Shown: positions 1,150 through 29,000 of the stretch, piece by piece
Layout of the letters: the number at the start of each line of letters is the position of its first letter
How positions within the stretch are numbered: position 1 is the stretch's first letter
Virus record (IMG/VR): IMGVR_UViG_3300030329_004647
Location: 1-64,000 of that record
Strand: one strand, 5' to 3'
Length of the DNA stretch: 64,000 bases
The notes under the pieces: model-generated
Database searches by the model: none
What the model saw: the letters and a program-made list of their open reading frames with translations, nothing else
Told to the model about the DNA's origin: nothing
Program-made: the position numbers and the translations under genes

Positions 1150-1160
1150 ATGCCTTTTGG

Positions 1161-1192: not shown

Positions 1193-1196
1193 TAGT

Positions 1197-1879: not shown

Positions 1880-2619
1880 AAACAAAAATATTTGAAATAG
1901 GAGGATGTGTTAGAGATGAACTACTAGGTTTACACACCAAAGATATTGATTTTACTGTGGTTATTGACCAAAGAGGTGAAAACTTAAGTGTAGACGAAGG
2001 TTGGGCATTTATGAAACACTTCCTCCTCAATGAAGGATTTAAGATTTTTTTAGAAACTAAAGATTGTTTTACTATTAGAGCGATGTTCCCTAAAGGACAT
2101 CAACATGAGGGACTTGTTGCGGATTTTGTAATGGCTAGGAAAGAAGTGGGTTACATTCCAGGGACCAGAAAACCAATCCTAGAGTTAGGTAGTTTAGAAG
2201 ATGATATGATAAGAAGAGATTTTACAGTAAATGCAATGGCTAAAGACGAACATGGAGAAATTATAGACTTATTTAATGGTCAACAACATCTGAAATGGAA
2301 ATTACTAATGACACCATTAGACCCTATGACTACTCTTATGGATGACCCACTCCGATTATTAAGAGCTTTAAGGTTTAGTATTACCAAAGGATTTACAATA
2401 GATGGTGCAGTTCGGAGAGCAATGTTTCAACCTAACTTAATGGATAAGTTAGAAAATGTAGTCTCACAAGAAAGGATAAGAGAAGAGGTTACAAAAATGA
2501 TGAAACATGACACCCTCTCTAGTCTCAGATTATTCCAAGAAATCGATAAAAGAGAACCAAGATTATTAGAAATTATATTTGGGGGTGATATGTGGCTATT
2601 ACCATCAACAAAAAAATAA
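1876..2619 (+). CDS. cca: class II tRNA nucleotidyltransferase / poly(A) polymerase family, short form
   Basis: GGCVRDELLG..KDIDF, DFVMAR, EDDMIRRDFTVNAMA, DDPLRLLRALRF, ERIREEVTKM. Confidence 0.9.
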   Translation: MKTKIFEIGGCVRDELLGLHTKDIDFTVVIDQRGENLSVDEGWAFMKHFLLNEGFKIFLETKDCFTIRAMFPKGHQHEGLVADFVMARKEVGYIPGTRKPILELGSLEDDMIRRDFTVNAMAKDEHGEIIDLFNGQQHLKWKLLMTPLDPMTTLMDDPLRLLRALRFSITKGFTIDGAVRRAMFQPNLMDKLENVVSQERIREEVTKMMKHDTLSSLRLFQEIDKREPRLLEIIFGGDMWLLPSTKK

Positions 2620-2622
2620 GAT

Positions 2623-3474
2623 ATGATAAAATATAAATTAGAAGAATACACAGACACCCTAACACTAAGACAATACAGAAAAGAAAAAACACTATTACAA
2701 GTGGAACTTCTTAAACTACAGGAATGGGTTATTAAAGAAAAGAAAAAGGTGGTTATTGTGGTAGAAGGTAGAGACACCGCGGGTAAAGGAAGTACCATTA
2801 AAAGATTTGTAGAAAAATTAATAGAACGAAAAAGTTCAGACAACCCAACATATAGAGTAGTATCCCTAGGGATTCCTAGTCCAGAAGAATCTAAAAATTG
2901 GTTTGAAAGATATGAAAAACATTTACCTAAGGAATCTGAAATTGTATTTTTTGATAGAAGTTGGTATAATAGAGCAATAGTAGAACCCGCGATGGGATAT
3001 TGTAGTGAGGGACAGTATAGAGATTTTATGGGTAGAGTTAATGAGTGGGAAAGTGAGTTAACACAAAAAGGGTTGATACTGATAAAATTTTATTTGGATA
3101 TCGATAAGGACAACCAACAAGAACGTATAACAGAAAGACAGGAGAGCCCATTAAAATATTGGAAGTTTTCTATGAATGACTTAGCAGCTTTAGGTAAGTG
3201 GGAAGCTTTTACAAAATACCAAAGCCAGATGTTTGAAAAGACATCCACCAAAAATAACCCATGGGTGGTCATAAACTCTAACAATAAACTAATAGCGAGG
3301 TTAACCGCTATTAGATATGTTTTACAGAATATAAACTATTTGGAAAAAATTCCACTTAAAGAAAAAAGATGGTCAGAAAGATTAAAAGAAATAAAAATTA
3401 AAGGAGTAGTCTTTAAAGACTTAACTGTTAAACAATACAATATATTAAAAGAATTGACACATGAAAAAAACTAA
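2623..3474 (+). CDS. ppk2: polyphosphate kinase 2 (class I-like)
   Basis: QVELLKLQEWV, EGRDTAGKG Walker A, IVFFDRSWYNRAIVEPAMGYC, LIKFYLDI, SPLKYWKFS. Confidence 0.92.
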   Translation: MIKYKLEEYTDTLTLRQYRKEKTLLQVELLKLQEWVIKEKKKVVIVVEGRDTAGKGSTIKRFVEKLIERKSSDNPTYRVVSLGIPSPEESKNWFERYEKHLPKESEIVFFDRSWYNRAIVEPAMGYCSEGQYRDFMGRVNEWESELTQKGLILIKFYLDIDKDNQQERITERQESPLKYWKFSMNDLAALGKWEAFTKYQSQMFEKTSTKNNPWVVINSNNKLIARLTAIRYVLQNINYLEKIPLKEKRWSERLKEIKIKGVVFKDLTVKQYNILKELTHEKN

Positions 3475-4009
3475 AATTATTAATTTTTTTGGTGGTCCTG
3501 GAATTGGTAAATCCACACAATCTGCAGGTCTATACTCACTTATGAAAAAAAATAACATGAGTGTAGAACTAACTTATGAGTTTCCTAAAATACTTGCTTG
3601 GGATGAAAATTTATCAGCTATTAAAGACCAGTTATATATAACGGCAAATCAACATAGAAATATAACCCGATTGTATGGTAAAGTAGATTATATTATTATA
3701 GACAGTCCTATATTATTTGGTATGGTTTATAAAAACAAATACGGAACCTCCTACCCTCAAGGAATATATGGAGAGTCTTTTGATATATTTCTACTAGACC
3801 TTTTTAATCAATATGACAATATTAATATACTTCTAAAAAGAAAAGAATTAAACTACCAAGATACAGGTAGATTCCAAGGATTAAACGAATCTAAAGAAAT
3901 AGACGATATATTAAAAAATCTTTTAGAAACTAATAGTATTCCTTATTTGGAGTTTGAGGTTTCCGATAACCTAACAAAAAAACTTTATAATAATTTATTT
4001 AATTCATAA
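3461..4009 (+). CDS. P-loop nucleotide kinase-like protein (AAA_28/NadR-like)
   Basis: IINFFGGPGIGKST Walker A; IIIDSP. Confidence 0.75.
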   Translation: MKKTKIINFFGGPGIGKSTQSAGLYSLMKKNNMSVELTYEFPKILAWDENLSAIKDQLYITANQHRNITRLYGKVDYIIIDSPILFGMVYKNKYGTSYPQGIYGESFDIFLLDLFNQYDNINILLKRKELNYQDTGRFQGLNESKEIDDILKNLLETNSIPYLEFEVSDNLTKKLYNNLFNS

Positions 4010-4017
4010 AAAAGTGT

Positions 4018-4025
4018 TATATTTG
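4018..4025 (+). promoter_or_regulatory. Bacteroidota-type -7 promoter element
   Basis: TATATTTG-TAGT-ATG(4030). Confidence 0.7.
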
Positions 4026-4029
4026 TAGT

Positions 4030-5322
4030 ATGGATGAAATTAAAGATTTAAAAAAAATACAAGAATTGGTAGATAGACTAAAGTCTACAAACTCAACTAA
4101 TGACAAAATTGATATTATTAAGGAGTATGGGGATGACTCTATGATTAAACAACTTTTAAAATATGTTTATTCTCCTTTTAAACAATATTATATAAAAAGC
4201 ACACAGTTAAAAAAACTAAAAAAATTATGTAACCCTACCTATTTTGGTAGTCTTTTTTGTATGTTAGATAATCTAACTAATAGAGTCTGGACAGGGCATA
4301 CAGCTATTGGATATGTTAATGGGTATGTTAAAAGTTTTCCAGAGTATAAAGAATTAATTTATTGTATAATCGATAAAAATTTAAAGACAAGAACGGGAGC
4401 GGACCTAATCAATAAAGCAATCCCTAAATGTGTACCAACATTTAAAGTAGCTCTTGCTAACTCTTACGACAAACAAAAGGGTAAAGTTGATTTTAATACA
4501 CAGACATGGTTCGCTTCCCAAAAGTTAGACGGAGTTAGATGTCTTGCTGTGGTTGATGAAAACGGTAAATGTAATTTTTATTCACGACAAGGTAAGACTT
4601 TTGATACTCTAGATGTGGTTAAAAACGAAATAGAGAGTCTAGGATTAACTAATGTGGTTTTTGATGGTGAAGTGTGTATAGTGGATGAAAATGGTGTAGA
4701 GAACTTCCAAGACATCATGAAAGAAATAAAAAGAAAGGACCACACCATTAAAAATCCTAAATATAAAATATTTGATTATCTTACATTAGATGAGTTTGAC
4801 AACCAACTAAGTACAAGAAATTTAAGTGTAAGATTAAGTACATGTGTAAAACCTAAATTAGGTTGTGTTGAAATGTTAGAACAGTGGAAAGTTGAGTCAG
4901 AAGACCATTTCCAAGAATTAGCAGAACTCGCCACTAAAAATAATTGGGAAGGTTTAATGTTACGTAAAGATTGTGGTTACAAGGGAAAGAGAACAAATGA
5001 GTTATTAAAAGTAAAAAAATTCTTTGATGAAGAATATGTTGTGAAAAGTGTGGAAAGCGCTATTCACAGAATTATTATAGGAGGGATAGAAGCTGAAGTT
5101 GAAATGTTAAGTAATGTTATTATCGAACACAAAGGATGCGATGTGGGAGTAGGTTCAGGATTCAATCAAGAAGAAAGAAAACTGTACTTTAAAAATCCTG
5201 AACTTATAATTGGAAAGACAATAACCGTCCAATATTTTGAAGAAACAATTAATCAAGACGGATGTCACTCACTTAGATTTCCTGTTGTCAAACACATTTA
5301 TGAAAACGGAAGAAACGTATAA
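4030..5322 (+). CDS. lig: ATP-dependent DNA ligase
   Basis: motif I QKLDGVR, VFDGEV, EGLMLRK, KRTNELLKVK, VGSGF, ITVQYFE, SLRFPV. Confidence 0.95.
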   Translation: MDEIKDLKKIQELVDRLKSTNSTNDKIDIIKEYGDDSMIKQLLKYVYSPFKQYYIKSTQLKKLKKLCNPTYFGSLFCMLDNLTNRVWTGHTAIGYVNGYVKSFPEYKELIYCIIDKNLKTRTGADLINKAIPKCVPTFKVALANSYDKQKGKVDFNTQTWFASQKLDGVRCLAVVDENGKCNFYSRQGKTFDTLDVVKNEIESLGLTNVVFDGEVCIVDENGVENFQDIMKEIKRKDHTIKNPKYKIFDYLTLDEFDNQLSTRNLSVRLSTCVKPKLGCVEMLEQWKVESEDHFQELAELATKNNWEGLMLRKDCGYKGKRTNELLKVKKFFDEEYVVKSVESAIHRIIIGGIEAEVEMLSNVIIEHKGCDVGVGSGFNQEERKLYFKNPELIIGKTITVQYFEETINQDGCHSLRFPVVKHIYENGRNV

Positions 5323-5325
5323 ACT

Positions 5326-6024
5326 ATGAATTATTTATTTGATGTAGACGGAACACTAACCCCTAGTCGATTACCTATTGATGAGGGGTTTGAATCATTC
5401 TTTCTTAGTTGGATGAAAGGTAAAAACGTTTATTTAGTAACAGGTTCCGATAAAGACAAAACAATAGAACAAGTTGGAGAAGAGATTTGGAATAGTTGTA
5501 CCAGAGTATATCAGTCATGTGGTAATGCCGTTTATGAAAAGGGAAAATTAATAAGACAGTTAGATTTTGTATTAGATACAAAATTAAAAAAACTTTTAAA
5601 CGAATTTTTATTGTGGTCTAGTTGGGAAGATAGATACCAAACTAACATCGAAGAACGTATAGGTCTTATAAATTTTAGTGTTGTAGGTAGAGATTGTCCT
5701 CAGGAGGTTAGAGAAAGATATTATAAATGGGACCTAAAAGCAAAAGAAAGAGAAACATTTTGTCAAATTATTGAAGAAAAATTTCCTGAAATCGAAGCAA
5801 GTGTAGGTGGACAAATATCAATAGACATATATCCTAAAGGTAAAAATAAAGCACAAGTTTTGGAAGAAATTGATGGTGAAATAACATTTTTTGGTGACAA
5901 GTGTGAACCAGGAGGCAATGATTATCCTATAGTTAAAATGTTATTCCCTTTAATAGATGAACACACAATACACTCCGTAAAAAATTGGAGAAATACCTGG
6001 GAAATATTAAAAAATAGGTTATGA
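5326..6024 (+). CDS. phosphomannomutase, eukaryote-type (HAD IIB)
   Basis: FDVDGTLTPSR, VTGSD, IEERIGLINFSVVGR, GGQISIDIYPKG, FFGDKCEPGGNDYPI. Confidence 0.88.
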   Translation: MNYLFDVDGTLTPSRLPIDEGFESFFLSWMKGKNVYLVTGSDKDKTIEQVGEEIWNSCTRVYQSCGNAVYEKGKLIRQLDFVLDTKLKKLLNEFLLWSSWEDRYQTNIEERIGLINFSVVGRDCPQEVRERYYKWDLKAKERETFCQIIEEKFPEIEASVGGQISIDIYPKGKNKAQVLEEIDGEITFFGDKCEPGGNDYPIVKMLFPLIDEHTIHSVKNWRNTWEILKNRL

Positions 6025-7154: not shown

Positions 7155-7937
7155 ATGAATAACACATTAAATCAACCTTTAAACAAAGAAGACCTTCAGT
7201 CTCTCGCACCTTCAATATTTACAAATACACCTTCTAAAAAAGTCTCTAGTAAATACACTTTTATATCTACCGAAAGAGTAGTTGACGACTTAAACGTGCT
7301 GGGTTGGAAACCTTTCCAAGCTTCACAAAGAAAATCTAGAACTAAAGAAGATAGTTTATTCACCAAACATTTGGTAAGATTAAGAAATAATACTATAGGT
7401 AAAATAGGTGATTCTATTCCTGAGGTAGTTTTAACAAATTCTCACGATGGAAGAAATGCCTTTAGTCTACACGCGGGTTTATTTAGGTTGGTATGTTCTA
7501 ATGGTTTGGTAGTAGCTGACACTACCTTTGAACAAGTTAAAATAAAACACCAATGGTACTCCTTTGACGAAATACAAAGAGTTACTAGTAGTATGATAGA
7601 AAAAGTACCAAGTCTAGTAAAACATATGAGTGCGTTAGATAGGATAGAATTATCTCTAGAAGACCAAGTTATGTTTGGTAAAAAGGCTATGAAATGTAGA
7701 TGGAAAGCAGGTAATGAAAAACTAGATGTAGAAGACTTATTGGAAGCGGTAAGAGTAGCTGATTCAGGTAACTCATTATGGAAAGTATTCAACACCGTTC
7801 AAGAAAAACTTATCAAGGGTGGTTTAGTCTATAACAACCAAAAAGAAAAATATCAAAAACTTAGACCTATAGTTAATATTGACCAACAGATTAATATTAA
7901 TAAAAACTTATGGGCACTTACTGAAGAATACCTGTAA
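7155..7937 (+). CDS. DUF932/DUF945 family protein
   Basis: APSIF...SSKYTFIST, KHLVRLR, PEVVLTNSHDG, AGLFRLVCSNGLVV. Confidence 0.88.
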   Translation: MNNTLNQPLNKEDLQSLAPSIFTNTPSKKVSSKYTFISTERVVDDLNVLGWKPFQASQRKSRTKEDSLFTKHLVRLRNNTIGKIGDSIPEVVLTNSHDGRNAFSLHAGLFRLVCSNGLVVADTTFEQVKIKHQWYSFDEIQRVTSSMIEKVPSLVKHMSALDRIELSLEDQVMFGKKAMKCRWKAGNEKLDVEDLLEAVRVADSGNSLWKVFNTVQEKLIKGGLVYNNQKEKYQKLRPIVNIDQQININKNLWALTEEYL

Positions 7938-7941
7938 TAAG

Positions 7942-9666
7942 ATGGAAGAAAGAGTACTCCAGAAATATAAGTGGGAAAACTTTACTCTTGAGGAATTCGC
8001 TGACCATAACCCCATTCCATGTGATTTTAAATGGCAAAGGGGTTATACAGCGAATTTAGCTCCATCAGGTCAGGAACCAGAAATCTATACGTTTAATAGG
8101 ACTAAAAGACTTTATGAGACCACTGAAAAAGAATGGATTAAAAAGTCAGTCAACCTTTTTTGCACCGCTAGAGTTAGTAGAGTCACTTTAATTTTATCTG
8201 AAATTATAGAAAATGGTAAACCTATTAAATTAAGAGTGTGTGTTTATTATTTTACTAAAGAAAGAAAAGTAGGTAAAAGATATTTTTGGAAGAAAGCAAA
8301 TAGCGTTTATTATACTGTAAATCTAAAACAAAAAAACTTTTATGTGACTAAAAAAAATAAGTCAGGAAGACACACAAATACCACCACCACTAAAAACCCA
8401 ATAAAGTTCTTTAAAAGAGATGAGTCACTCCTAAATGGTATATTTCTACACCTTAATATACCTACTAATTTTGATAATTCTATAATACCTTATGTAGAAT
8501 TAGGTACCTACGAAACCGACGCTATGATAATGAAGCAAGAAGTAGAAACCGCCGTAGATAAAATTCTAAGTAAGTTTAAGAATAGATTAGAAGTAAAAAA
8601 TATAGGGATGAAATGTGACCTATATACCATTTTATGTAAATGGTTTATAAACAAAAGAAAAATTAAAGTACCAAACAATTGGAAGGATTATATGAGATAT
8701 TATTATCCTGGTATAAAAGAATTAAAAAAACACAATAATAAACTTATACAAACCATACTTTCGAGTTATGGATTAAAGTCTAAATCTAGTATTAGTTTAC
8801 TCCACACTAACGACTTTATTTGTCTAGATACGTACAAAATCATTAAAGATTTGGTAGGTAAACACAACATATCAAAAATCAATACTAGTTTATTTAAAGA
8901 CGAACACCTTCTAGGATTAAGTAACACAGAACAAAGATTTAAAGCTCTTAATTTAAGTAAAAAAGAGATAAAAAATATTATTAACTTACTTAACGATATT
9001 GCACATAATGGTGACCCATATGTTTTAAGAGATTTTATAGCTGACCATATCTCTATGAGAGAACAATTAAAACGAAAGACAGGAAAAACATACAGGATAA
9101 AAGCTGATACAATAAAATTGTATAACAATGAACATAGTAAATGGAGTACTAAATTATCAGAAATAAGAAAGGGGGAAAACATAGAGTATCTATATGACAA
9201 CAATTTTATTAAAATAATAACATCTCCTTATACAGATGAAGTAGGTCAAAAATTTATAATAAAACTATTAAAAACAGGACTAGATTACACTGAAGAGGGG
9301 TTAAAACAAAAAAATTGTGTTGCCACTTACATAGATAAATTTGATAGGTGTATAATATCTGTAAGAACTATGGATGATGAGAGAGTTACCTTAGAGTATG
9401 TTATTCCTCATGAACACAACCCACCCAAACTAATACAAGCTCGAGGAAAACTTAATACAATTATTCCAGATAAATTCAATAAGGTTGTACATGAAATAAC
9501 ACAAAGATTTTTACATATACACAATACTAATATATGGAAACCTACACAAATTGAAGTAAATAATTTAGTAACTGGTCTAAAAGAGATAAAAGAAGTATCA
9601 AAACCTTTAACAATTAAAAATGATTTCTTATTATATGAAGAGGAATTCGAAGATTTACCATTTTAA
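7942..9666 (+). CDS. large protein with C-terminal PcfJ-like domain (start moved to MEERV)
   Basis: EEGLKQKNCVATY...IISVR...RVTLEY...IQARGKLN; ends DLPF. Confidence 0.7.
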   Translation: MEERVLQKYKWENFTLEEFADHNPIPCDFKWQRGYTANLAPSGQEPEIYTFNRTKRLYETTEKEWIKKSVNLFCTARVSRVTLILSEIIENGKPIKLRVCVYYFTKERKVGKRYFWKKANSVYYTVNLKQKNFYVTKKNKSGRHTNTTTTKNPIKFFKRDESLLNGIFLHLNIPTNFDNSIIPYVELGTYETDAMIMKQEVETAVDKILSKFKNRLEVKNIGMKCDLYTILCKWFINKRKIKVPNNWKDYMRYYYPGIKELKKHNNKLIQTILSSYGLKSKSSISLLHTNDFICLDTYKIIKDLVGKHNISKINTSLFKDEHLLGLSNTEQRFKALNLSKKEIKNIINLLNDIAHNGDPYVLRDFIADHISMREQLKRKTGKTYRIKADTIKLYNNEHSKWSTKLSEIRKGENIEYLYDNNFIKIITSPYTDEVGQKFIIKLLKTGLDYTEEGLKQKNCVATYIDKFDRCIISVRTMDDERVTLEYVIPHEHNPPKLIQARGKLNTIIPDKFNKVVHEITQRFLHIHNTNIWKPTQIEVNNLVTGLKEIKEVSKPLTIKNDFLLYEEEFEDLPF

Positions 9667-9676
9667 AAAAATAAAT

Positions 9677-10744
9677 ATGAATAACACACAAATACAATTT
9701 TACGAACCAACATTTGCTGGAAATTTTCCATTAATGAATTATTACATTCACACGTTTAATAAAATTGCAAATATAGCAGATTTTTCAGAGTGTTTTAGAG
9801 AAGATGTTTTACAAGAAATAGAATCATCTCCATACCTGGAAAGGATTAACACTATCGAAGAAATTAATTTTGTTAATAATCAAAAAAACGAAAGAAAAAA
9901 TATTATTTACAAAGCTAAAACACAATATGGTGATGGTAAATATATGTTAAGTATTTCACATCATTCAGAGGAGTCAATTTGTAACGCTACTTTACTTTAT
10001 GATAAAAAAACAGAAGTAGAATTTTTAATTAAACTATTAAAGAAATTTTCTACAGTTAGAGAAAAAGAAGTGGGCCTTATAATCAAAGACGAATTTGGAT
10101 TAGCTGTTAGAGGTTTTAAAGTTAGTGCGGGAAAAGATTTTAAAATAGAAGACAATTACAATGAAGATTTTTTAAAAATTGATAAAAAAATTAAAAAATG
10201 TTTATCAGCTAAGAATAAAAGTGGACTACTTCTTCTTCATGGTAAACCAGGTACTGGCAAAACTACCTATATTAAACATCTAGCAGATAGTTTAAAAAAA
10301 CAAATAATTTTTGTTCCACCTATGATGGCAGGGGCAATCGGGGACCCAGGATTTATACCCTTACTCCTCAAAAATCCTGATAGTATTTTAATTATAGAAG
10401 ACGCTGAAAATGTGGTTAAAGATAGGAATGTGACAGGAAACGCAGATGTGGTATCTAATATACTAAATGTAACTGATGGTATTTTAGGAGAGTGTCTTAA
10501 GATACAGATTATAGCTACATTTAATACCGCAAAAACTCAAATAGACGCAGCTCTTCTAAGAAAAGGAAGACTATTAGCAGAATACAAGTTTGATAACTTG
10601 AGTGTAGAAAAAAGTAACAAATTACTAAAAAAACTTGGAAAAAAAGCTAAGACAAAAGAACCAATGTCTTTAGCAGATATTTATTACTATAATGAAGATA
10701 GTACAAGTACTAATAACAATAATAAAATAGGATTTTTTAATTAG
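9677..10744 (+). CDS. AAA+ ATPase (start moved to MNNTQ)
   Basis: LLLHGKPGTGKT, ILIIEDAE, IIATFN, IDAALLRKGRL. Confidence 0.9.
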   Translation: MNNTQIQFYEPTFAGNFPLMNYYIHTFNKIANIADFSECFREDVLQEIESSPYLERINTIEEINFVNNQKNERKNIIYKAKTQYGDGKYMLSISHHSEESICNATLLYDKKTEVEFLIKLLKKFSTVREKEVGLIIKDEFGLAVRGFKVSAGKDFKIEDNYNEDFLKIDKKIKKCLSAKNKSGLLLLHGKPGTGKTTYIKHLADSLKKQIIFVPPMMAGAIGDPGFIPLLLKNPDSILIIEDAENVVKDRNVTGNADVVSNILNVTDGILGECLKIQIIATFNTAKTQIDAALLRKGRLLAEYKFDNLSVEKSNKLLKKLGKKAKTKEPMSLADIYYYNEDSTSTNNNNKIGFFN

Positions 10745-10924: not shown

Positions 10925-11194
10925 ATGGAAATAATAATTTATTCTTTAGAAAGTTGTCCTCATTGTGTGGAACTAAAAGAAATGTTAGAAGATGAGGGAT
11001 TATCTTTTAAGGTTAAAGATATTGATGTACACAAAAAAGAGTGGGAACAAATTAGAGAACACACAAAAGTAGATTATGTTCCTACTGTACTAATGGTTGA
11101 TAAAGAGAATAAAACTGGTTCAGTTATAGCCCCAGACCGTGATTATGACGAACTAACTGAATGCGTACAAAAAGTCAAAAACAAACTTCTCTAG
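10925..11194 (+). CDS. glutaredoxin/NrdH-like redoxin
   Basis: YSLESCPHC, YVPTV cis-Pro motif. Confidence 0.88.
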   Translation: MEIIIYSLESCPHCVELKEMLEDEGLSFKVKDIDVHKKEWEQIREHTKVDYVPTVLMVDKENKTGSVIAPDRDYDELTECVQKVKNKLL

Positions 11195-11215: not shown

Positions 11216-12781
11216 ATGTCAATTATATTAGAAAACAAAAATAAGAATTCAATTTTTTGGGACACAGTAAAAGATTTAAATGTTAATCTTAAATTTGTGG
11301 GCACTTTTGGATTTGGCATAACTGGACTGTATGGTATTGTACAAGATTTATTATTTAGAACCTTCCCAACACTTACCGAACAAGAAATAATACTCATTTT
11401 TTTAGCTTCTCTTACTTATTTTAGTTCTCATTTAATTGATAATGTTTCAGAATTAAGAAACAAAATTAAAGATAAAAAATTAGAAAAGTATGTTAATAAA
11501 ACCACAGAGGTTTTAAAAAGTTTAGAAAATGTAGGAATACAAGTTGCGAAATCAGCTGGATTTACCATAGGTTCTATGATGGAGTTAGTTGGATATGTGT
11601 TTTTATTGATTCCATTTTTAGACACGGTAACCCAAATAATACAAAATAATAGTTTTGATTTATTTACTTTAGGAACTTATTTAAAGTCTATACTTGCCTC
11701 TATAGGTATTTTTTATGTTAAAAATTTATTTAATTCTTTAGTTTTAAAATTAGCTGGGGGTAAAAAAGATGAGTTAAAAGAAAATTTTATTAAAGATATG
11801 TCACTACTAGAACATGATACGAAAAATGTCTTTAATAGGTGGAAGAAAGAAACAGATAGGGGAGGTGTAGCCCAACGGATTAATGAGGATGACCTTTACT
11901 ATTTTTTAATAGAAGACCCAAGTGAAGATAAGAGATATGTTGATTGGATGGCTAATCAGTTTGTAAGCGGGTATTGGTTAAACGTAAATAGAGAATACCT
12001 AGTTAGATTAATTAAATTATTTCATCACAATTTAGAAAGATTAACCCCTAAAAATGTAAGTAACCTAAAGGATACCTCAATCCCTGAAAAATATTTGTTA
12101 AAAATAATAGACAATCCAGATAATATAGAAAGTTACGCGGGATACCCTCACCTTGAAAAGGTATTATCTCTACTTGCAAAAAGTCAATTTAATTTATCCG
12201 AAGTTGAATTAGGGTTGGGTGAGTTTGAAGAAATGGTAGGTGAATCTAAAAAAGCTGATTTAATTATAGAATCACAAGGACTAGATATTGATGAAGCTTA
12301 CGATGTTTATTTTAATAGTCCAATCAAACACATAAAAGAACACAAAGACCCCAGAATAAACCAACCACTTCAAATAGGTGACGTAGTGGAACTAATATAT
12401 ATGGATGACCCATATAACCCTATATCACCACTAACAAGAGGTGTGGTTATGGGATTTGAACCTACTCCTGGTGAAGATAAAATTCTAGTTCGTTGGATTA
12501 TGGACGCAGAAAATGAAGAGTTTAGAAATTTTCCTATGATACCCGAGGCAGATGTTTGGAGAAAAATAGAACCATCTACGGAGTCTATAACAGAAGGGAA
12601 TCTATATGAATATGATAATGGTATGTTTGGAATTAAGTTTAAAATTTCACCCAATAAAAAGAAAGTATATATTAAGGAGGGTAAATACTACGGTGTTAAA
12701 GCTACTAAAAAACAATTAAAAGAAGACCTATTCCAAAAAATGATACATTTGTTATTAAAAAAAGAAAAATTGGTCTACTAA
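11216..12781 (+). CDS. modular protein: TM-rich module + DPS/KYxxW module + SH3-like module
   Basis: hydrophobic N-terminal third; EDPSEDKRYVDWM resembles 17058/18848; IKE|HKDPRINQPLQIGD resembles repeats in 41862. Confidence 0.75.
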   Translation: MSIILENKNKNSIFWDTVKDLNVNLKFVGTFGFGITGLYGIVQDLLFRTFPTLTEQEIILIFLASLTYFSSHLIDNVSELRNKIKDKKLEKYVNKTTEVLKSLENVGIQVAKSAGFTIGSMMELVGYVFLLIPFLDTVTQIIQNNSFDLFTLGTYLKSILASIGIFYVKNLFNSLVLKLAGGKKDELKENFIKDMSLLEHDTKNVFNRWKKETDRGGVAQRINEDDLYYFLIEDPSEDKRYVDWMANQFVSGYWLNVNREYLVRLIKLFHHNLERLTPKNVSNLKDTSIPEKYLLKIIDNPDNIESYAGYPHLEKVLSLLAKSQFNLSEVELGLGEFEEMVGESKKADLIIESQGLDIDEAYDVYFNSPIKHIKEHKDPRINQPLQIGDVVELIYMDDPYNPISPLTRGVVMGFEPTPGEDKILVRWIMDAENEEFRNFPMIPEADVWRKIEPSTESITEGNLYEYDNGMFGIKFKISPNKKKVYIKEGKYYGVKATKKQLKEDLFQKMIHLLLKKEKLVY

Positions 12782-12966
12782 ATTTCGTCGGACACCATTC
12801 TTTGTTTGTATATCGCTTTTTGTTTCATTTCTCTAAGTCTGTCTGATTTTTTGGTAAAAGCCTTTTTATCTCTTAGAGTTTTTAATTGTTTTGTCAATTT
12901 TACTTTTCTTCTAAGTGTTTTTAAGGCTCTGTTTAAATTATTTTTTTCTATTTTAACTATTAACAT
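12778..12966 (-). CDS. rpsU: ribosomal protein bS21 homologue
   Basis: MLIVKIEKNNLNRALKTLRRKV...FTKKSDRLREMKQKAIY fits the Bacteroidota bS21 pattern; 62 aa, very basic. Confidence 0.85.
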   Translation of the reverse strand: MLIVKIEKNNLNRALKTLRRKVKLTKQLKTLRDKKAFTKKSDRLREMKQKAIYKQRMVSDEI

Positions 12967-12990: not shown

Positions 12991-13662
12991 CTATTTTTTC
13001 TTTTTACTACCAATAACTTCATCAATCAAACCGTATTTAAGAGATTCATCCGCTGTCATCCAATTGTCTCTTTCTGCATCTTTCATTACTTGTTCCGCGT
13101 CTTTATCACAGTACTCTCCGAGTAACTCAAATAATGTTTTATTTATTTTTTCCCACTCCATAAAATCAATTCTAGCGTCTTGTATGTTTCCTATAGAACC
13201 ACCACTAGATTGGTGTATCATACTTCTAGAAAACCTAAGTGAAGCTCTTTTACCCTTTGCTCCCGCTCCTAAAAGTACAGCACCCATACTAGCTGCCATA
13301 CCTGTATTGATAGTAGCAATATCACATTTAACATAATTCATGACATCTATAATACTTAGTCCGGATTTTACAGAACCGCCTGGAGAGTCTATATGCATTA
13401 CAATATCACTTTTACTATCTAGATTGTCTAGAAACATAAGTTGTGCTTGTACTATTGTAGACATCCCATCATTAATTGGTCCTGCACACCAGATAATACG
13501 TTCCATCATTAATCGAGAGAATATATCCATTTGGGTTACTCTCATTTCTCTCTCCTCTAGGATAAAAGGAGTCATACTACTTTCATAGTCGTGTAACGCT
13601 AAAGAAGACACTCCTAAGTGTTTCGTTGCGTAACTTTTAAATTCATTTTTTACATTCAACAT
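12991..13662 (-). CDS. clpP: ATP-dependent Clp protease proteolytic subunit
   Basis: MDIFSRLMMERII, HIDSPGGSV, GMAASMG (catalytic Ser), MIHQ (His), ERDNWMTA, YGLIDEV. Confidence 0.96.
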   Translation of the reverse strand: MLNVKNEFKSYATKHLGVSSLALHDYESSMTPFILEEREMRVTQMDIFSRLMMERIIWCAGPINDGMSTIVQAQLMFLDNLDSKSDIVMHIDSPGGSVKSGLSIIDVMNYVKCDIATINTGMAASMGAVLLGAGAKGKRASLRFSRSMIHQSSGGSIGNIQDARIDFMEWEKINKTLFELLGEYCDKDAEQVMKDAERDNWMTADESLKYGLIDEVIGSKKKK

Positions 13663-13675: not shown

Positions 13676-14734
13676 TTATAAAGGTACGAAAAATTTTAAC
13701 TTATTCAAATTTTCCCACATAAAATTTGATTCACCAGATAACTCACCAAAGTAATTATTCATACAGGCATTTTTATATATAGGTTTAGATAACTCTAAAT
13801 CATTTATTATTTCAGGCATAGAAAAAGGAAAAACATCCAATATTAAACTTTTTAACCAACGTTCTTCTACAATAAGTGTTCCAAAACAATTCATAGATAT
13901 AGATATCGGTTTATCTTTAGAATCTCCCCACGCAATAGATATTAAACATTCATTTGCAAAATTTGCTCTCACCACATGTTTAGCTATATTTCTAGCTAAC
14001 AAACTTCCAGTTCTACTAAAAAAAGATGGGTCTTTCCCTACAAAATTTGGATTGGATAATTTAAGCCCATTTCTAGTAACTAAAGAGGGATTCCAAGACA
14101 AAGAAGTGCCTACGGAAACATCTGGACAAAGTTTTTTATGGGTTACTGTTCTGATATTTGGTGCTTGTCTCCCCAACTCAACACTTTTAAACACATCTGA
14201 AACTAAAGACTCAACATTTTTAATAGTTTTACTATTTTCTAAATCTAGAATCACATCGGTAAATTTAGTATTAAATCCATCAACCTCTGAAACTAACACA
14301 CACTTACCACTACGGGATATTCCTTTTTCCCAAAGGTTATGTGTAAGAAGTTGTCCTACTTTATCTTCTTTACTAATAAATTCCGCGGTTTCGGAATTTG
14401 CATAACCATACGTCACACAAGAAGGTCTTACTACTTCATCTGCAACATCATTTAAAAAACTTACATGTCTTATGGATGTGGTACCAAAATAAGATGTGTC
14501 CCCTGTGTAACCAAGAGTATCAGCTACTTCTAAAACACACTCATCAGTATCTATTTTGTTTTCAGAAAAAACTTCTCCACTAATAATAGATATTTGATTT
14601 TTGATAGTCGTTCTTACATCTAGCTTAACATCTTTAGATTTTTTTATATGACCATCTAATATTGTTTCAGAGATTGTGGATGAAACTCGGTCAGGATGTC
14701 CCGGCAAAAGATATTCAGTTATTTTTTTATACAT
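13676..14734 (-). CDS. metK: S-adenosylmethionine synthetase-like protein with degenerate active site
   Basis: GHPDR, SGEV, YGYANSET, GKDPS, ARNIAKHVV, KPIYKN retained; GAGDQG and GGPxGDxGLTGRKII signatures absent. Confidence 0.8.
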   Translation of the reverse strand: MYKKITEYLLPGHPDRVSSTISETILDGHIKKSKDVKLDVRTTIKNQISIISGEVFSENKIDTDECVLEVADTLGYTGDTSYFGTTSIRHVSFLNDVADEVVRPSCVTYGYANSETAEFISKEDKVGQLLTHNLWEKGISRSGKCVLVSEVDGFNTKFTDVILDLENSKTIKNVESLVSDVFKSVELGRQAPNIRTVTHKKLCPDVSVGTSLSWNPSLVTRNGLKLSNPNFVGKDPSFFSRTGSLLARNIAKHVVRANFANECLISIAWGDSKDKPISISMNCFGTLIVEERWLKSLILDVFPFSMPEIINDLELSKPIYKNACMNNYFGELSGESNFMWENLNKLKFFVPL

Positions 14735-14799
14735 TTTAAATTATTTAATCAAAATATAATAAAAATAACTGAATAGTCTAAATGGTAGAGATAAAAAAT

Positions 14800-15414
14800 T
14801 TATACAATATCTTTTGACTCAATCAAAGTATAAGTAAAGTTGTTGCTCCAAGTATCTCTTGCTTTTCTCATAATTTTCATAAAAAGAGTCCAATCATCAT
14901 TTGCTGCAATTACTTGACACCCTGCTGACCACTTATCTACTTTAGTAGATTTTTTACCAGCGTACTTGGTAGCTCTATGTATATTAATCCCAAATAAACC
15001 AGTCATAGTATTGTCATCACTTAAATCATAAGTACCATCTTTGTTAGCGTCTCTATAGACAGTAACAGGTCTTTGTTGGCCTAATGCTTCGTATCTTCCT
15101 TGGTGTTTTCTAATTTTATGAGAACCTTTGTATTGCCCCTCCTTAAGAACAGCGACCCCTTCCTTGCGCATTATATTCTCCACCCAATGCGTGCCGGGGT
15201 CTGTAGTACACTCAAAGCAGTAGAATTTCCATTCACCCTCTTTTTTGTATGAAACAGTTATACAGTCGTCAAAACGATTAGTGACTTTGTTTTTGGTTTC
15301 AGAGTTTCTGATACCGACGATATTAACATTATAATCGCCATTTTCGAACCATTTGTAACCTTTTTCTTTTACAGCAGATTCGATTTGTTCCCTTGTGTAA
15401 CAAGTTTTACTCAT
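14800..15414 (-). CDS. YkuD/L,D-transpeptidase-like peptidoglycan enzyme (possible endolysin)
   Basis: GINIH-x16-SAGCQV His/Cys motif; VNIVGIRN, TTDPG. Confidence 0.55.
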   Translation of the reverse strand: MSKTCYTREQIESAVKEKGYKWFENGDYNVNIVGIRNSETKNKVTNRFDDCITVSYKKEGEWKFYCFECTTDPGTHWVENIMRKEGVAVLKEGQYKGSHKIRKHQGRYEALGQQRPVTVYRDANKDGTYDLSDDNTMTGLFGINIHRATKYAGKKSTKVDKWSAGCQVIAANDDWTLFMKIMRKARDTWSNNFTYTLIESKDIV

Positions 15415-15450: not shown

Positions 15451-16545
15451 CTAACTGGTTCTCCAGTTTAGTTCATCAATAAATATTTCGTTGAAGTGAT
15501 TTTCCACTTCAGTGTTGTCAGGGTATTCAGAAACTCGTGGACACAGAAGTCCTCCATTATAGTCATTCTCTTCCATTGCCGTAACTAAAGTACCAAACCA
15601 ACTACCTTCTTCTAAATAAGGGTCAGCATAACTCTCCCATTGTTTAATAACATCCCAGAATTTATCGGTAATATCTATTTTATATTTCCAATTAGGCACC
15701 TCAACCAATTGACCTTCTTTATTTCTTCTACGACTACTCCCAGACTGAACACTTTCTCCCTGAGGTAAAATTTCTCTAACTGCATCAACATAGGTGTTAT
15801 AATATTCCCCAAGAGAAATATCATTATAAGCCGTATCAAACGTATCCCGTATAGCTCCTTCCACTTCTTCTAGCTCTTCGGTGTTTCCTATTAATACTGA
15901 CATATTATATCTGTCTTTAGCTACACTCATTATTCTATCTGGTGTGAGAATAAAACCACTCTTTCTATCACCTAATTTGTCAGCATCAACCCAAGAACCA
16001 AACTCTTCTCTAAAAGAAGAAACTTCCATATTACTAAAGTTTTCTAGTAAAAAATCTACAAGTTTTTGATAGTTTTCCTCACTCATTATGGAGTCTTCAT
16101 TAACATTTCCTACTATGTCTTCTAAACTCATACTGCCATAATGAGGTTCCCAATCTAAACCTTCTTCAGAAAATATTTGTTCAGCTAGGTCCCTACAAGG
16201 TATGTCTTGTCTATAATAACCATCTGTACTAAACAACTGTGACAAATCATTCTCATTATCTAGATATAAAAAATATTTATCACCCTCTTGTTTAACATCC
16301 CCAATATCCCTTGAAACCAAATCAAAAGCTAACTTTTCATAAGGCTTATAACTACTATCAACTAAGGGAGGGACTATTTTTAAATAATTGTCTTCGTCAA
16401 ATAAATCTACAAGTTGGTCTAGTTGGTCATTCTTCTTATAATAATCAAAAATAGAATATATATCATGACCAAATAGTTTTTCAGCATCCTCTATCGTGTC
16501 AAGTTGCTCGTAGACTAAATTCTTTATGATGTTTACCAGTTTCAT
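15451..16545 (-). CDS. acidic protein with N-terminal leader MKLVNIIKNLVYE|Q
   Basis: Asp/Glu-rich ORF; TATTTATA 4 nt before ATG. Confidence 0.75.
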   Translation of the reverse strand: MKLVNIIKNLVYEQLDTIEDAEKLFGHDIYSIFDYYKKNDQLDQLVDLFDEDNYLKIVPPLVDSSYKPYEKLAFDLVSRDIGDVKQEGDKYFLYLDNENDLSQLFSTDGYYRQDIPCRDLAEQIFSEEGLDWEPHYGSMSLEDIVGNVNEDSIMSEENYQKLVDFLLENFSNMEVSSFREEFGSWVDADKLGDRKSGFILTPDRIMSVAKDRYNMSVLIGNTEELEEVEGAIRDTFDTAYNDISLGEYYNTYVDAVREILPQGESVQSGSSRRRNKEGQLVEVPNWKYKIDITDKFWDVIKQWESYADPYLEEGSWFGTLVTAMEENDYNGGLLCPRVSEYPDNTEVENHFNEIFIDELNWRTS

Positions 16546-26045: not shown

Positions 26046-29000
26046 ATGCGAAATTTTCTATTAATTATATTATGTTTTATATCGTTTGGAGTTGTAGCAC
26101 AGAACGATTCGTGGTTAAACCTACAAATCCAATTTGATAACTATCCTGAAGAATTAGACTGGAAATTATTTCAATTAGACACTTTAGCACCGAACAATAT
26201 TCTTGTCGCAGAGGGCGGACCTTACTACTCAACACCAAACCAACATTTACTTAATGTTTTTATACCTAACTTACATTCTAATGAAACTTACATATTAGAA
26301 GTCCATGACTCATTTGGGGACGGGTTAAGTTGGCCTAATAATGGGTATGTTTATTTGTCTAATATTTGTACGGACACCATATCATATGTGGAGGGAGACT
26401 TTGGTCCTTTTTTTACAGACACATTAACTGTTTCACCATGTAATTCCCCACCATTAGGTTGTCCAGATACATTAGCACTTAACTACGATTCTCTTGCGCA
26501 ATACACAGACATGAGTGTATGTACTTATCCTCCTTGTACTTCAGGTTTAGACACTCTATATGTTGAACCTATATGTGATAATGGGGTTTCAAAATTATAC
26601 TGGCAGTGGTCAGACCAAACAGATACAAATCCTAATTGTGGGATTATCGGTTATTATAGAGGAACAGACCTAAATAACCTCCCTTTTTATCCTTGGCCAA
26701 GTAACTGGCCCCAAGGAGGATTAACAACAACTATTAACCAAACATCACAAGGACAAATGCATTATTTTTATGCGATGTTAGGTGATTCTACTTTAACTGA
26801 CACTCTATCCATAATGCCTATACAATGCATATTAGGATGTACCGACCCTACAGCGATGAATTATAATCCATGGGCAAATGAAGATGACGGTAACTGTCAA
26901 AGCGCACAAGGAAGTTGTAATTACGGAGAAACATGTGTGAGAGTAATAGTAACACCAGATTCTTATGGAGAAGAAACTTATTGGTCACTAACCGATACTA
27001 TTACAGGAACCGTATTAGGTTCTGTGAATCCTGGTTTCTACTCAACACCAGGAGTTCCAGTAACCACTAATGTATGTGCACCTGAAAATTCAGTATTAGA
27101 ATTTACATTAAACGACCAATATGGAGACGGTATGTGTGGAACTTGTTGGGGTGGAATAGATGGTTCGGTGTTAGTAGAAGCTTGTGGTGATACTATAGCA
27201 CACATTGGACCTCCTACACCTATGGATTTTGGAAGTGATACAACGTTTGTTGCGGTTCCAGCACCAGTGTGTACAACAACAGGACCTACAGTAGGTTGTA
27301 TGGACCCAGGTTATGTCGAATACCTCCCAACAGCAACACAACAAAATCCAGGAGATTGTGTAACACCCGTTCAGTTGGGTTGTGTTGACCCAATGGCTTT
27401 TAATTATGACTCCACAGCCAATCAACAACTTATAACACCTAGCTGTACTTATACGTTAAGGTTATTAGATGGTGCTGGTGATGGATGGTTCGGTTCTTGG
27501 ATAGGAATCACACAAGGAGATTCTATTATTGGTGATTTTACTATGACACAAGGAGACACTCTAGACATTCCAATAGTATTAGACGCAATAAAACCAGCAA
27601 AAATATATTTCTTTACACTAGGAAATTCAGTATCAACAGCTAGTCAATGTGGTGTTCAACTAATAAACCCAATGGGACAAGTTACATTTTACGCTGGTTC
27701 TAATCCATGGACAGACCCTATTATTCCATTTCCTTTTATATACACCACAATTCAAGATTGTGGAAACAGTTGTGTACCTACAATTCCAGGATGTATGGAT
27801 TCTACCGCATACAATTATAATCCAGGAGCAAATGTACCAGATACAGTGTTTCCGTGTTTTTACAATCCAGGGTGTATAAGTCCTGCTTATTTAGAATACC
27901 ATACTTATTTAGATTCTGTTGGTGTTGCTCCAGATTTTCTGGACCCATTTTCTTGTCAGAACCTTGCAATTTTTGGTTGTATGGACTCAACTCAATTTAA
28001 TTACGACCAATATGCTACTGTTAATTGGACTTCCGCGACCGATTCATCAGACCCGTGTGTCCCTATGATATATGGTTGTACAGACGCCACAGCTTTAAAT
28101 TATGACCCATTGGCTAATACAGAAAATTATACGTGTATACTACCAATATATGGGTGTACGGATTCAACAGCTTTTAATTTTAACCCATTAGCGAATACAA
28201 ATAATGGAACTTGTATTGCTGTAATAGAAGGGTGTACTGACCCTACAGCTATGAATTATAATCCTAACGCTAATACAGATGATTTTAGTTGTATAGCTTA
28301 CATTTACGGTTGTACCGACTCCACGATGTGGAATTATAATCCATTAGCAAACACAGATAACGGAACCTGTGAACCTTTTGTTTATGGTTGTACGGATGTT
28401 ATAGCAGCTAACTTTGACCCATTAGCAAACACAAATAACAATACATGTTATTATAATCCAGGTTGTACCGACCCACTTTATGTAGAATTTTATAATCAAG
28501 GATTTACCGCTGACTTTGACGATGGTAGTTGTTTGACCCTAGTTGTATATGGTTGTACCGATAACACTATGTTTAATTATGACCCAACCGCAAATGTAGA
28601 TAATGGTAGTTGTGAACCTTTTGTGTATGGGTGTATAGACTCTACTATGTTTAACTATGACCCATTAGCTAACACGGATAATGGTACGTGTGTACCTTTT
28701 ATTTACGGGTGTATGGACGCCACAATGTTTAATTACGACCCATTAGCCAATACAAATCAAGTGAGTGAAACAGATATCTCCAACCCATGTATACCAATTA
28801 TATATGGATGTACCGACTCAACAGCATTTAATTATGACCCTTATGCAAATACAGATAACGGAACTTGTGAAGCAGTGGTATACGGATGTACAGATGAATA
28901 CGATTTTCCAGCATACCTAGATTCAACTTATATAAATTATTTACCAGGATTTTCAACGGTTACCACTTACAATGTTGATGTCACAGCAAATACAGACGAC

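What the first reader, a model, noticed from the sequence alone, without database searches (positions are those of the whole stretch)
13676..14734. Catalytically eroded MetK: possible dominant-negative SAM-synthesis decoy
Seen: a full-length intact ORF aligning to MetK along its length, with no frameshift. Against E. coli MetK (recalled numbering) H14, D16, K165 and K265 equivalents are kept. The K+ ligand E42 becomes R, GAGDQG (D118) is gone, the GGPMGDCGLTGRKII loop (D238, R244, K245) is replaced by LCPDVSVGTSLSWNPS, and K269/D271 become F/S. Established: MetK active sites form at subunit interfaces; phage T3 depletes SAM to blunt type I R-M and BREX. Inference: a pseudo-enzyme that co-assembles with host MetK to lower SAM, or a repurposed sensor. 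That would be a new anti-defence route.
Basis: partly seen in the sequence, partly recalled or inferred. Interest (0 to 1): 0.78.

Follow-up and report, generated by a model that had tools for sequence, protein, structure and literature searches.

The report
Dead SAM synthetase kept by jumbo phages
A marine jumbo phage carries a complete copy of the enzyme that makes the cell's methyl donor SAM, with its catalytic machinery stripped out but the gene still preserved by natural selection; sister phages keep a working copy in the same spot, so the dead version must do some other, still unknown job.

Summary
It has a confident full MetK fold (pLDDT 88.6; TM 0.85-0.90 to solved MetKs). It lacks 24 of 56 near-universal MetK positions, the gating loop and the catalytic loop.

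It is not decaying. Four lineages of the eroded protein exist in related marine phages and form one clade. dN/dS is about 0.09, against 0.07 for intact orthologues. All three listed natural variants in this lineage are synonymous.

Sister jumbo phages carry a catalytically intact metK in the same slot (phrog_3000-like gene, MetK, ClpP). The eroded gene is therefore an ex-enzyme derived from a phage auxiliary metK.

Of ten conserved polar contact residues of the MAT dimer interface, the eroded clade keeps one, and the replacements differ between lineages. Selection acts on the first and last thirds of the chain, including clade-specific motifs already present in the active relative.

Best reading: a non-catalytic binding or scaffold protein in a conserved ClpP-bS21 operon, partner unknown. 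Anti-defence through SAM depletion remains possible but untested.

The parts
13676..14734 (-). Eroded MetK ('pseudo-MetK'), 352 aa, intact ORF
14447..14734 (-). Residues 1-96: conserved N third (38% invariant across the four eroded lineages). Holds EYLLPxHP (H14/P15 kept), the KNQ(I/L)SI hairpin, LGYTxDT and IRHxxF.
14051..14446 (-). Residues 97-228: fast-evolving middle third (6% invariant). No Pfam central-domain hit. The gating loop and GAGDQG are missing, and D163 is lost.
14045..14134 (-). Residues 201-230: the replaced catalytic loop (Ec D238-K245 and GGG258-260). It is the only low-confidence stretch of the model (pLDDT 52-63).
13679..14050 (-). Residues 229-352: conserved C third (29% invariant). 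G264-K265 are kept; K269 and D271 are lost.
13826..13858 (-). Residues 293-303: clade-specific invariant helix WLKSL(I/V)LD.FP, partly present in the intact sister protein.
13679..13702 (-). Residues 345-352: clade-specific C-terminal tail K(L/I)K.F(V/I)P(L/Y), shared with the intact syntenic MetK (…LKEFLPF) and absent from canonical MetKs.
12991..13662 (-). ClpP, 223 aa, Ser-His-Asp triad intact. It starts 13 nt after the pseudo-MetK stop. The pair is conserved in all seven related lineages, with gaps of 3-15 nt.
12778..12966 (-). Ribosomal protein bS21, 62 aa, last gene of the minus-strand operon.
14800..15414 (-). phrog_3000-like 204-aa gene directly upstream. It is 66-68% identical in phages carrying either eroded or intact MetK.
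15451..16545 (-). 364-aa acidic protein of unknown function, syntenic first large gene of the operon.

Best explanation
The ORF encodes a catalytically dead descendant of a phage-borne SAM synthetase, a pseudo-MetK.

Shown:
- It arose once, in a lineage of marine jumbo phages whose probable hosts are Bacteroidota.
- It came from an active metK that still occupies the same slot in sister phages (phrog_3000-like gene, MetK, ClpP).
- It keeps the whole three-domain MetK fold.
- It has lost the substrate, metal and gating-loop residues and the polar network of the classical subunit interface.
- It is under purifying selection about as strong as on the intact orthologues.
- That selection is concentrated on the first and last thirds of the chain. 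It includes clade-specific motifs (KNQ hairpin, WLKSL[IV]LD.FP helix, K.F[VI]P[LY] C-terminus), and 15 of 37 such positions were already present in the active relative.

Inferred:
- It cannot make SAM.
- It works as a non-enzymatic binding or scaffold protein, continuing a second, non-catalytic role that the phage MetK already had.
- By conserved gene linkage, the leading candidate context is the co-oriented ClpP-bS21 host-takeover operon (proteolysis and translation).
- It does not act by co-assembling with host MetK through the classical dimer interface.

Confidence is about 0.9 for 'dead but selected ex-enzyme derived from a phage metK'. It is 0.45 for the full statement, including the binding/scaffold role and the rejection of interface co-assembly.
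For: - Homology and fold: pLDDT 88.6, pTM 0.90; TM 0.85-0.90 to MetK chains; independent alignment-free Atlas model, pTM 0.89.
- Loss of catalytic positions: 24 of 56 columns that are >=90% conserved in 119 canonical MetKs are lost in all four eroded lineages, and the gating loop is deleted.
- Positional orthology with intact MetK: L021, L029 and L030.
- Single clade: SH-aLRT 100 for the eroded four, 86 for eroded plus intact syntenic.
- Selection: dN/dS 0.093 (eroded L006 vs L014) against 0.067-0.077 (intact). There are 2 synonymous and 0 nonsynonymous differences among contigs of P0152, and 3 synonymous and 0 nonsynonymous listed variants in the window's own lineage.
- Distribution of constraint: N third 38%, middle third 6%, C third 29% invariant; 37 gain-of-constraint positions, 15 shared with the intact L021 protein.
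- Interface: of ten conserved polar contact residues of the MAT dimer (PMC7271947 Table S1), the eroded clade keeps only E23 in all four lineages. The substitutions differ between lineages, while intact L021 keeps nine.
- Linkage: MetK is followed by ClpP after 3-15 nt in all seven lineages although flanking genes vary. The ClpP triad is intact. bS21 lies in the same operon.
Against: - No partner has been identified and no biochemical or expression data exist. No RNA run was listed.
- The gene pair with ClpP predates the erosion, so it may be simple co-inheritance.
- The 286-aa L019-type relatives have no ClpP next door.
- No MetK-ClpP link was found in the literature.
- Motifs shared between intact and eroded forms could partly be phylogenetic signal and not evidence of a shared second function.
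- Hydrophobic contacts could still allow hetero-oligomers with host MetK despite loss of the polar network.
- dS is near saturation (1.2-1.5) in the informative pair, so the ratio is approximate.
- About 168 kb of this phage genome was not examined.
Confidence: 0.45

Rival explanations
1. One reading: a dominant-negative decoy. The dead subunit co-assembles with host MetK at the classical dimer interface, where both active sites are shared. This kills both sites and lowers SAM, blunting SAM-dependent defences such as type I R-M and BREX.
For: - The full MetK fold is retained.
- A real precedent exists: the rat MAT R265H/wild-type heterodimer makes no SAM, and human R264H is dominant (PMC7271947).
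- Phages do target MetK and SAM: T3 SAMase (PMC8406200) and BREX escape (bioRxiv 10.1101/2023.02.27.530186).
- The gene is under purifying selection.
- It has the highest dN of 15 syntenic genes between deep lineages, as might be expected of a host-interaction protein.
Against: - Nine of ten conserved interface contact residues are replaced, including both partners of the E42-R244 salt bridge. They are replaced differently in each lineage, so this surface is not constrained to fit a conserved host protein.
- The ancestor was a SAM producer, which is the opposite effect.
- By inference from known MetK biology, already assembled host tetramers would not be poisoned by a co-assembling subunit during a lytic cycle.
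- In related phages, operon-mate bS21 is transcribed late together with structural genes (PMC9723584), unlike early anti-restriction genes. This is only an analogy.
Confidence: 0.12
2. A regulator of host MetK acting through other surfaces. Homodimers of the dead protein dock on assembled host MetK through the inter-dimer (tetramer) interface or the outer surface. They either inhibit it, as T3 SAMase does, or activate or stabilise it, as trypanosomatid 'prozyme' dead paralogues do for their active partners.
For: - The KNQ hairpin is invariant. It lies at human K61/T62, and T62 is named at the dimer-dimer interface in PMC7271947.
- Dead paralogues that regulate their active homologues are a common class; see the DHS example PMC3663545, listed.
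- An activating role would continue the ancestral SAM-boosting direction.
Against: - The KNQ hairpin is clade-specific and shared with the intact phage protein, while canonical MetKs are variable there. It could equally serve self-association.
- There is no direct evidence of any contact with host MetK.
- Host MetK was not identified.
Confidence: 0.15
3. A residual or new small-molecule function: a sensor or sink for SAM, ATP or polyphosphate, or a new catalytic activity using the retained H14, K265 and (in this lineage only) D16, E55 and K165.
For: - H14, P15, G264 and K265 are invariant in all four eroded lineages.
- The window's protein alone also keeps D16, E55, K165, D266 and R272.
Against: - The other three lineages lost D16, E55 and K165, so the shared function cannot depend on them.
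- The adenine, ribose, methionine and metal ligands (Q98, D118, D163, D238, R244, K245, K269, D271) and the gating loop are gone in all four.
- The loop that replaces the catalytic loop is predicted to be disordered.
Confidence: 0.08
4. A pseudogene in slow neutral decay that happens still to be open.
For: - It diverges fast between deep lineages: dN 0.70, the highest of 15 syntenic genes.
- The middle third is nearly unconstrained.
Against: - The chance of this open frame is about 2e-14.
- Four lineages at 36-47% identity are all intact and similar in length, 338-352 aa.
- dN/dS is 0.09.
- Only synonymous variants are listed within lineages.
- The model is confident and compact.
Confidence: 0.02

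Closest known systems
Intact metK of sister marine jumbo phages (L030 = IMGVR_UViG_3300027771_001853, 298 kb; also L029 and L021/P0004)
   Same: Same genomic slot and neighbours (74-aa, 364-aa and phrog_3000-like genes, then MetK, ClpP, DUF932, PcfJ). Sister position in the tree. Shared clade motifs: KNQ hairpin, LGYT, KH[IV]V..SL..D.FP helix, LK.F.P. tail.
   Different: The sister proteins are 383 aa and hit all three Pfam domains. They keep every catalytic position, the gating loop and nine of ten interface contact residues. Ours has lost them and is only about 30% identical.
Viral metK auxiliary metabolic genes (e.g. Streptococcus phages Javan405 and phi1207.3, Erysipelothrix phage phi1605, Microcystis phage Mel-JY01; phrog_1569)
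   Same: Virus-encoded MetK homologues of 330-400 aa.
   Different: Those keep all substrate-binding motifs, as also stated for viral MetK in bioRxiv 10.1101/2021.01.05.425418. They often sit beside DNA methyltransferases. Ours has lost the motifs and sits beside ClpP and bS21, and no methyltransferase was found in the window.
Dominant-negative MAT subunit (human MAT1A R264H / rat R265H)
   Same: A MetK-family subunit that is catalytically crippled by change at the shared interface and active site. The same arginine (Ec R244) is lost here.
   Different: That is a single substitution in an otherwise native interface that still pairs with wild type (PMC7271947). Here nearly the whole polar interface network is replaced and varies between lineages.
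Phage T3 SAMase (SAM lyase that also inhibits MetK)
   Same: A phage protein aimed at host SAM supply. It would be the functional analogue if the decoy idea were right.
   Different: It has an unrelated fold. It cleaves SAM and binds the outside of assembled MetK tetramers to form filaments (PMC8406200). Nothing here shows SAM cleavage or MetK binding.
Regulatory dead paralogues of oligomeric enzymes ('prozymes', e.g. trypanosomatid deoxyhypusine synthase, PMC3663545)
   Same: A catalytically dead homologue kept by selection.
   Different: Those are paralogues that co-exist with, and activate, an active copy in the same genome. No second MetK was found in the window or flanks, and the partner would have to be the host enzyme.

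Membership tests
MetK / S-adenosylmethionine synthetase (EC 2.5.1.6) | Three-domain MetK fold | tested here: met
   AF2 pLDDT 88.6, pTM 0.90. Foldseek TM 0.85-0.90 to E. coli, Ureaplasma and human MATs. Independent Atlas model, TM 0.92.
MetK / S-adenosylmethionine synthetase (EC 2.5.1.6) | All three Pfam signatures (S-AdoMet_synt_N, _M, _C) | tested here: not met
   N and C score above cut-off. There is no hit to the central-domain model PF02772. The intact sister P0004 has all three.
MetK / S-adenosylmethionine synthetase (EC 2.5.1.6) | Substrate, metal and phosphate ligands (K17, E42, Q98, D118, D163, D238, R244, K245, K269, D271, GGG258-260) | tested here: not met
   All are replaced in the window's protein. 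24 of 56 near-universal columns are lost in all four eroded lineages.
MetK / S-adenosylmethionine synthetase (EC 2.5.1.6) | Gating loop over the active site (Ec ~99-111) | tested here: not met
   A 13-residue deletion shared by all four eroded lineages; the loop is present in intact L021.
MetK / S-adenosylmethionine synthetase (EC 2.5.1.6) | SAM synthetase activity | not testable with these tools
   Needs an enzyme assay or complementation.
Pseudoenzyme (dead homologue retained by selection) | Clear homology to an enzyme family together with loss of its catalytic residues | tested here: met
Pseudoenzyme (dead homologue retained by selection) | Purifying selection after the loss | tested here: met
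   dN/dS 0.093 between eroded orthologues. Only synonymous variants listed within lineages. Four intact lineages.
Viral metK auxiliary metabolic gene | Virus-encoded and retaining the MetK substrate-binding motifs (HPDK, GDQG, DAK, TGRK, SGKD, KVDRS) | tested here: not met
   Virus-encoded, yes. Of the motifs, only HPD and GKD survive. Motif list from bioRxiv 10.1101/2021.01.05.425418.
Dominant-negative MAT subunit | Native tight-dimer interface able to pair with a wild-type subunit | tested here: inconclusive
   Only the polar contact residues could be checked. One of ten conserved ones is kept, and the replacements vary between lineages. Hydrophobic contacts and actual pairing were not testable.
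T3-type SAMase / MetK inhibitor | SAM lyase fold and binding to assembled MetK | tested here: not met
   The fold is MetK, not SAMase. Binding to MetK was not testable.

The most novel reading that the evidence does not exclude
A phage has turned its own SAM synthetase into a dead subunit that binds host MetK (by whatever surface) and shuts down or rewires SAM supply during infection. This would be a protein-mimicry route to escape SAM-dependent defences (type I/III R-M, BREX), distinct from SAM lyases. Natural intact and eroded orthologue pairs are available to prove it.
Probability: 0.15. Interest if true: 0.85.

Novelty: new variant of a known kind. Interest (0 to 1): 0.6.

Why it matters
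Viral metK is usually counted as an auxiliary metabolic gene that boosts SAM. Surveys that annotate by homology would score this gene the same way, although it almost certainly cannot make SAM.

I found no description of a MetK-family pseudoenzyme, viral or cellular, in the searchable literature.

Nature has provided the controls here. Closely syntenic phages carry an active copy, a dead copy, or possibly a still more reduced 286-aa copy at the same locus. The retained non-catalytic role can therefore be found by direct comparison.

If that role turns out to involve host MetK or the phage ClpP, it would add a new mechanism of host takeover in abundant marine phages that probably infect Bacteroidota. 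If it is only a scaffold, it is still a clean example of an enzyme-to-binder transition under selection.

Tried and rejected
- The word-index protein search with the single sequence found only one distant MetK. The exhaustive representative search and a clade profile were needed.
- No DNA match to INPHARED phages. No meaningful BFVD structural match.
- I asked whether MetK-ClpP adjacency is general. It is not: the closest ClpPs, in huge phages LR745206 and LR756502, have no MetK nearby.
- Expression: no RNA run was listed. The promoter and terminator scan was at background level.
- The literature held no MetK-ClpP link and no phage MetK pseudoenzyme.
- The 'regulatory paralogue of a second, intact phage copy' idea: no second MetK in the window or any fetched flank, but the remaining ~168 kb is unchecked.
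- The L019-type 286-aa protein as a further-eroded member is only weakly supported: hhalign probability 64%, E 6.6e-5; AF2 pLDDT 62.7; MetK top fold hit at TM 0.5, but the model alignment contained MetKs.
- The partly eroded P0012 and P0025 are bacterial chromosomal paralogues, not viral, so they are not part of this family.
- Neutral decay was rejected (see rivals).
- Homo- or hetero-oligomer prediction was not possible with the tools.

Full report
**1. Observation**

The ORF listing gives a single 352-aa ATG-initiated ORF at 13676-14734 on the minus strand. At the local base composition, an open frame of 352 codons has a chance probability of about 2e-14. The other five frames across it contain 6-46 stops.

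The protein matches Pfam S-AdoMet_synt_N (1.4e-12) and S-AdoMet_synt_C (4.3e-22), both above the curated cut-offs, but not the central-domain model. It matches solved MetKs at E ~1e-21 and the phage family phrog_1569.

I fetched the real E. coli metK and aligned it, so numbering rests on data and not memory.
- H14, D16 and K265 are kept.
- E42 is R.
- GAGDQG/D118 is gone.
- The D238-K245 loop is replaced.
- K269 is F and D271 is S.
- K165 is kept in the multiple alignment but gapped in the pairwise one.

Every other top homologue tabulated, including four cultured-phage MetKs, keeps essentially all of these positions.

**2. Fold**

An AlphaFold2 model built on a 63-sequence family alignment is confident (pLDDT 88.6, pTM 0.90). 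Its only weak stretch is residues ~201-230, the replaced catalytic loop. Foldseek places it on MetK chains at TM 0.85-0.90 with ~21% identity. The ESM Atlas holds an alignment-free model of the same sequence (pTM 0.89) that also matches MetK clusters. The whole three-domain fold survives, including the part Pfam no longer recognises.

**3. What genome this is**

The window equals positions 1-64000 of IMGVR_UViG_3300030329_004647, a 232-kb contig. An identical Tara Oceans scaffold exists. The sequence recurs in at least 20 marine or seawater DNA runs from 2014-2025.

It is a phage: ATP-dependent ligase, virion proteins and lysis enzymes are present. A T9SS C-terminal sorting domain and a SusC-like TonB-dependent receptor point to a Bacteroidota host. 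So do ClpP relatives in huge phages and Lak phages. Host assignment is an inference.

The gene lies in a minus-strand island: 74-aa, 364-aa, phrog_3000-like 204-aa, pseudo-MetK, ClpP (triad intact), then ribosomal protein bS21.

**4. Relatives and polarity**

The exhaustive search found only a handful of close relatives. Profile and locus searches added more.

Four eroded lineages exist:
- the window;
- L022/P0153;
- L006/P0003;
- L014/P0152, seen on 22 contigs.

In every one the gene is followed by ClpP after 3-15 nt. L022 reproduces the whole operon, including bS21, and the opposite-strand neighbours.

Three other contigs (L021, L029 and the 298-kb L030) carry a 383-aa MetK in the same slot with the same neighbours. 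It has all three Pfam domains and every catalytic position. In trees the four eroded proteins form one clade (SH-aLRT 99-100) on a long stem, and together with the intact syntenic proteins they form one side of a branch (support 83-86). The intact and eroded proteins also share clade-specific motifs.

The simplest history is that an active phage metK lost catalysis once. Long-branch attraction could inflate the clade support, but synteny and shared deletions agree with it.

**5. Selection**

| Comparison | dN | dS | dN/dS |
|---|---|---|---|
| Eroded MetK, L006 vs L014 (78% identical) | 0.135 | 1.45 | 0.093 |
| Neighbouring ClpP, same pair | 0.040 | 1.19 | 0.033 |
| Three intact orthologues | 0.055-0.062 | 0.71-0.89 | 0.067-0.077 |

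dS is near saturation in the eroded pair, so that ratio is approximate. Even so, 106 synonymous against 75 nonsynonymous codon differences tell the same story.

Contigs encoding the identical P0152 protein differ by two synonymous changes and no nonsynonymous ones. Marine metagenome contigs laid on the window list three variants inside the gene, all third-position synonymous. Only the best-supported variants are listed by that tool.

Between deep lineages the protein diverges fast. For the window against L022, dN is 0.70, the highest of 15 syntenic genes; ClpP is 0.18.

**6. Where the constraint lies**

Across the four eroded lineages, invariant positions make up 38% of residues 1-96, 6% of residues 97-228 and 29% of residues 229-352.

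Thirty-seven positions are invariant in the eroded clade but rare (<20%) in canonical MetKs. Fifteen of them are already present in the intact L021 protein. They include the KNQ hairpin, W269, the WLKSL(I/V)LD.FP helix and the C-terminal K.F(V/I)P(L/Y) tail.

The window's protein is the least eroded. It alone keeps D16, E55, K165, D266 and R272, so those residues cannot underlie the function shared by the clade.

**7. Test of the co-assembly idea**

MetK active sites lie at the tight-dimer interface. A rat R265H/wild-type heterodimer makes no SAM, so a dominant-negative subunit is possible in principle (PMC7271947).

That paper's Table S1 lists the polar contacts of the human MAT-alpha1 dimer interface. 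I mapped them through direct HMMER registers to human MAT2A and through motif registers to E. coli.

Ten of these residues are strongly conserved in canonical MetKs: E23, E57, E70, D134, Q135, K181, Q183, T262, R264 and Y320. The intact syntenic L021 protein keeps nine. The eroded clade keeps only E23 in all four lineages. The replacements differ between lineages: E57 to R/I/I/N, R264 to N/I/F/F, D134 to P/P/N/S.

A surface that had to dock onto an almost invariant host protein should be conserved, and this one is not. Two further points weigh against the model. The ancestor made SAM, which is the opposite effect. And by general knowledge, pre-assembled host tetramers would escape a co-assembling poison during a lytic cycle. 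In related phages bS21 is transcribed late with structural genes (PMC9723584), unlike early anti-restriction genes; this is only an analogy.

Hydrophobic contacts and real pairing could not be tested, so the model is disfavoured but not excluded.

**8. Interpretation**

Shown: a dead but selected ex-enzyme derived from a phage metK, in a conserved operon with ClpP and bS21.

Inferred: it acts by binding and not by catalysis, through the conserved N- and C-thirds. This probably continues a non-catalytic role already present in the active ancestor. The only genomic lead to a partner is the invariant linkage to ClpP. That linkage predates the erosion, and I found no MetK-ClpP link in the literature.

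**9. Breadth**

A 286-aa protein in L017-L020 may be a still more reduced member. It shares the EEWLKSLILD motif, aligns to the MetK profile over 261 columns (hhalign E 6.6e-5, probability 64%) and sits beside the glutaredoxin homologue, without ClpP. Its model is weak, however.

Viral metK genes described so far are reported to keep the substrate motifs (bioRxiv 10.1101/2021.01.05.425418). I found no report of a MetK pseudoenzyme.

**10. Verdict**

The pseudo-enzyme status and purifying selection are established. The specific decoy and anti-defence mechanism is unproven and partly contradicted.

This is a new variant of a known kind: a pseudoenzyme derived from a viral auxiliary metabolic gene. 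Natural intact and eroded orthologue pairs make the open question directly testable.

Noticed in passing
window 12778-12966 (-): A phage-encoded ribosomal protein bS21 (Pfam 8e-08, above cut-off) is the last gene of the same minus-strand operon. L022 has it in the same place. bS21 phages with nearby Clp proteases and Bacteroidetes hosts are described in PMC9723584.
   Followed up: partly
window 12991-13662 (-): A full-length cellular-type ClpP (Pfam 5e-60) with an intact Ser-His-Asp triad. It is 62-74% identical across related phages; the nearest database relatives are in >600-kb huge phages and Lak megaphages. It also has a ~40-residue N-terminal extension before the Pfam domain.
   Followed up: partly
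window 31523-33928 (+) and 26046-29417 (+): The phage encodes an 801-aa SusC-like TonB-dependent receptor (Plug, beta-barrel and CarboxypepD_reg domains) and a 1,123-aa protein ending in a T9SS C-terminal sorting domain. Both are hallmarks of Bacteroidota, so they are a host clue, and outer-membrane cargo of this kind is unusual for a phage.
   Followed up: no
window 14796-15188 (within the phrog_3000-like gene 14800-15414): The summed contig depth in seawater metagenomes jumps to ~230-1180x (X11, X15) and ~50-110x (X20) here, against ~10-40x over the rest of the operon (little change in X19). Many loose ends sit at 14889-14890. This segment seems to be shared at >=85% identity with far more abundant marine phages.
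   Followed up: no
window 23-6024 (+): A cluster of auxiliary genes: UvdE UV-endonuclease (23-946), a poly(A)-polymerase/CCA-adding-type nucleotidyltransferase (1876-2619), polyphosphate kinase 2 (2623-3474), an AAA_28 kinase-like protein (3461-4009), ATP-dependent DNA ligase (4030-5322) and a phosphomannomutase-like HAD protein (5326-6024).
   Followed up: no
window 45839-51202 (+): A 1,787-aa protein with no recognisable domains except a C-terminal AAA_33/zeta-toxin-like (polynucleotide-kinase-like) P-loop kinase domain at residues ~1595-1760.
   Followed up: no
L019:7434-8294 (+), also L017 and L018; L012:39-863 (+): Short MetK-like proteins in other viral contigs. The 286-aa type has the EEWLKSLILD motif and no Pfam hit, and lies beside a glutaredoxin homologue and a carbamoyltransferase. 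A separate 274-aa type is in IMGVR_UViG_3300018878_001890. Both lack the GHPD motif, so erosion or truncation of phage MetK may have happened more than once.
   Followed up: partly
L031:6227-7360 and L032:8001-9113 (P0025, P0012): Bacterial chromosomal MetK paralogues with partial loss of conserved positions (e.g. H14N and E42S in P0025; GGG to NPS in P0012). Each is followed by a small 4Fe-4S ferredoxin gene, and L031 has a second, truncated MetK-like gene ~1.7 kb downstream.
   Followed up: partly
L021:302-940: In the short contig carrying the intact MetK P0004, the phrog_3000-like gene is split into two adjacent frames (302-685 and 686-940). This is either a real disruption or an assembly error. 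It is intact in L029 and L030.
   Followed up: no
window 7155-10744 (+): A conserved DUF932 - PcfJ-like - AAA ATPase trio, followed by glutaredoxin (10925-11194). It is syntenic in L022, L014 and L023, and partly in L029 and L030. The PcfJ-like protein is as fast-evolving as the pseudo-MetK (dN 0.67).
   Followed up: no
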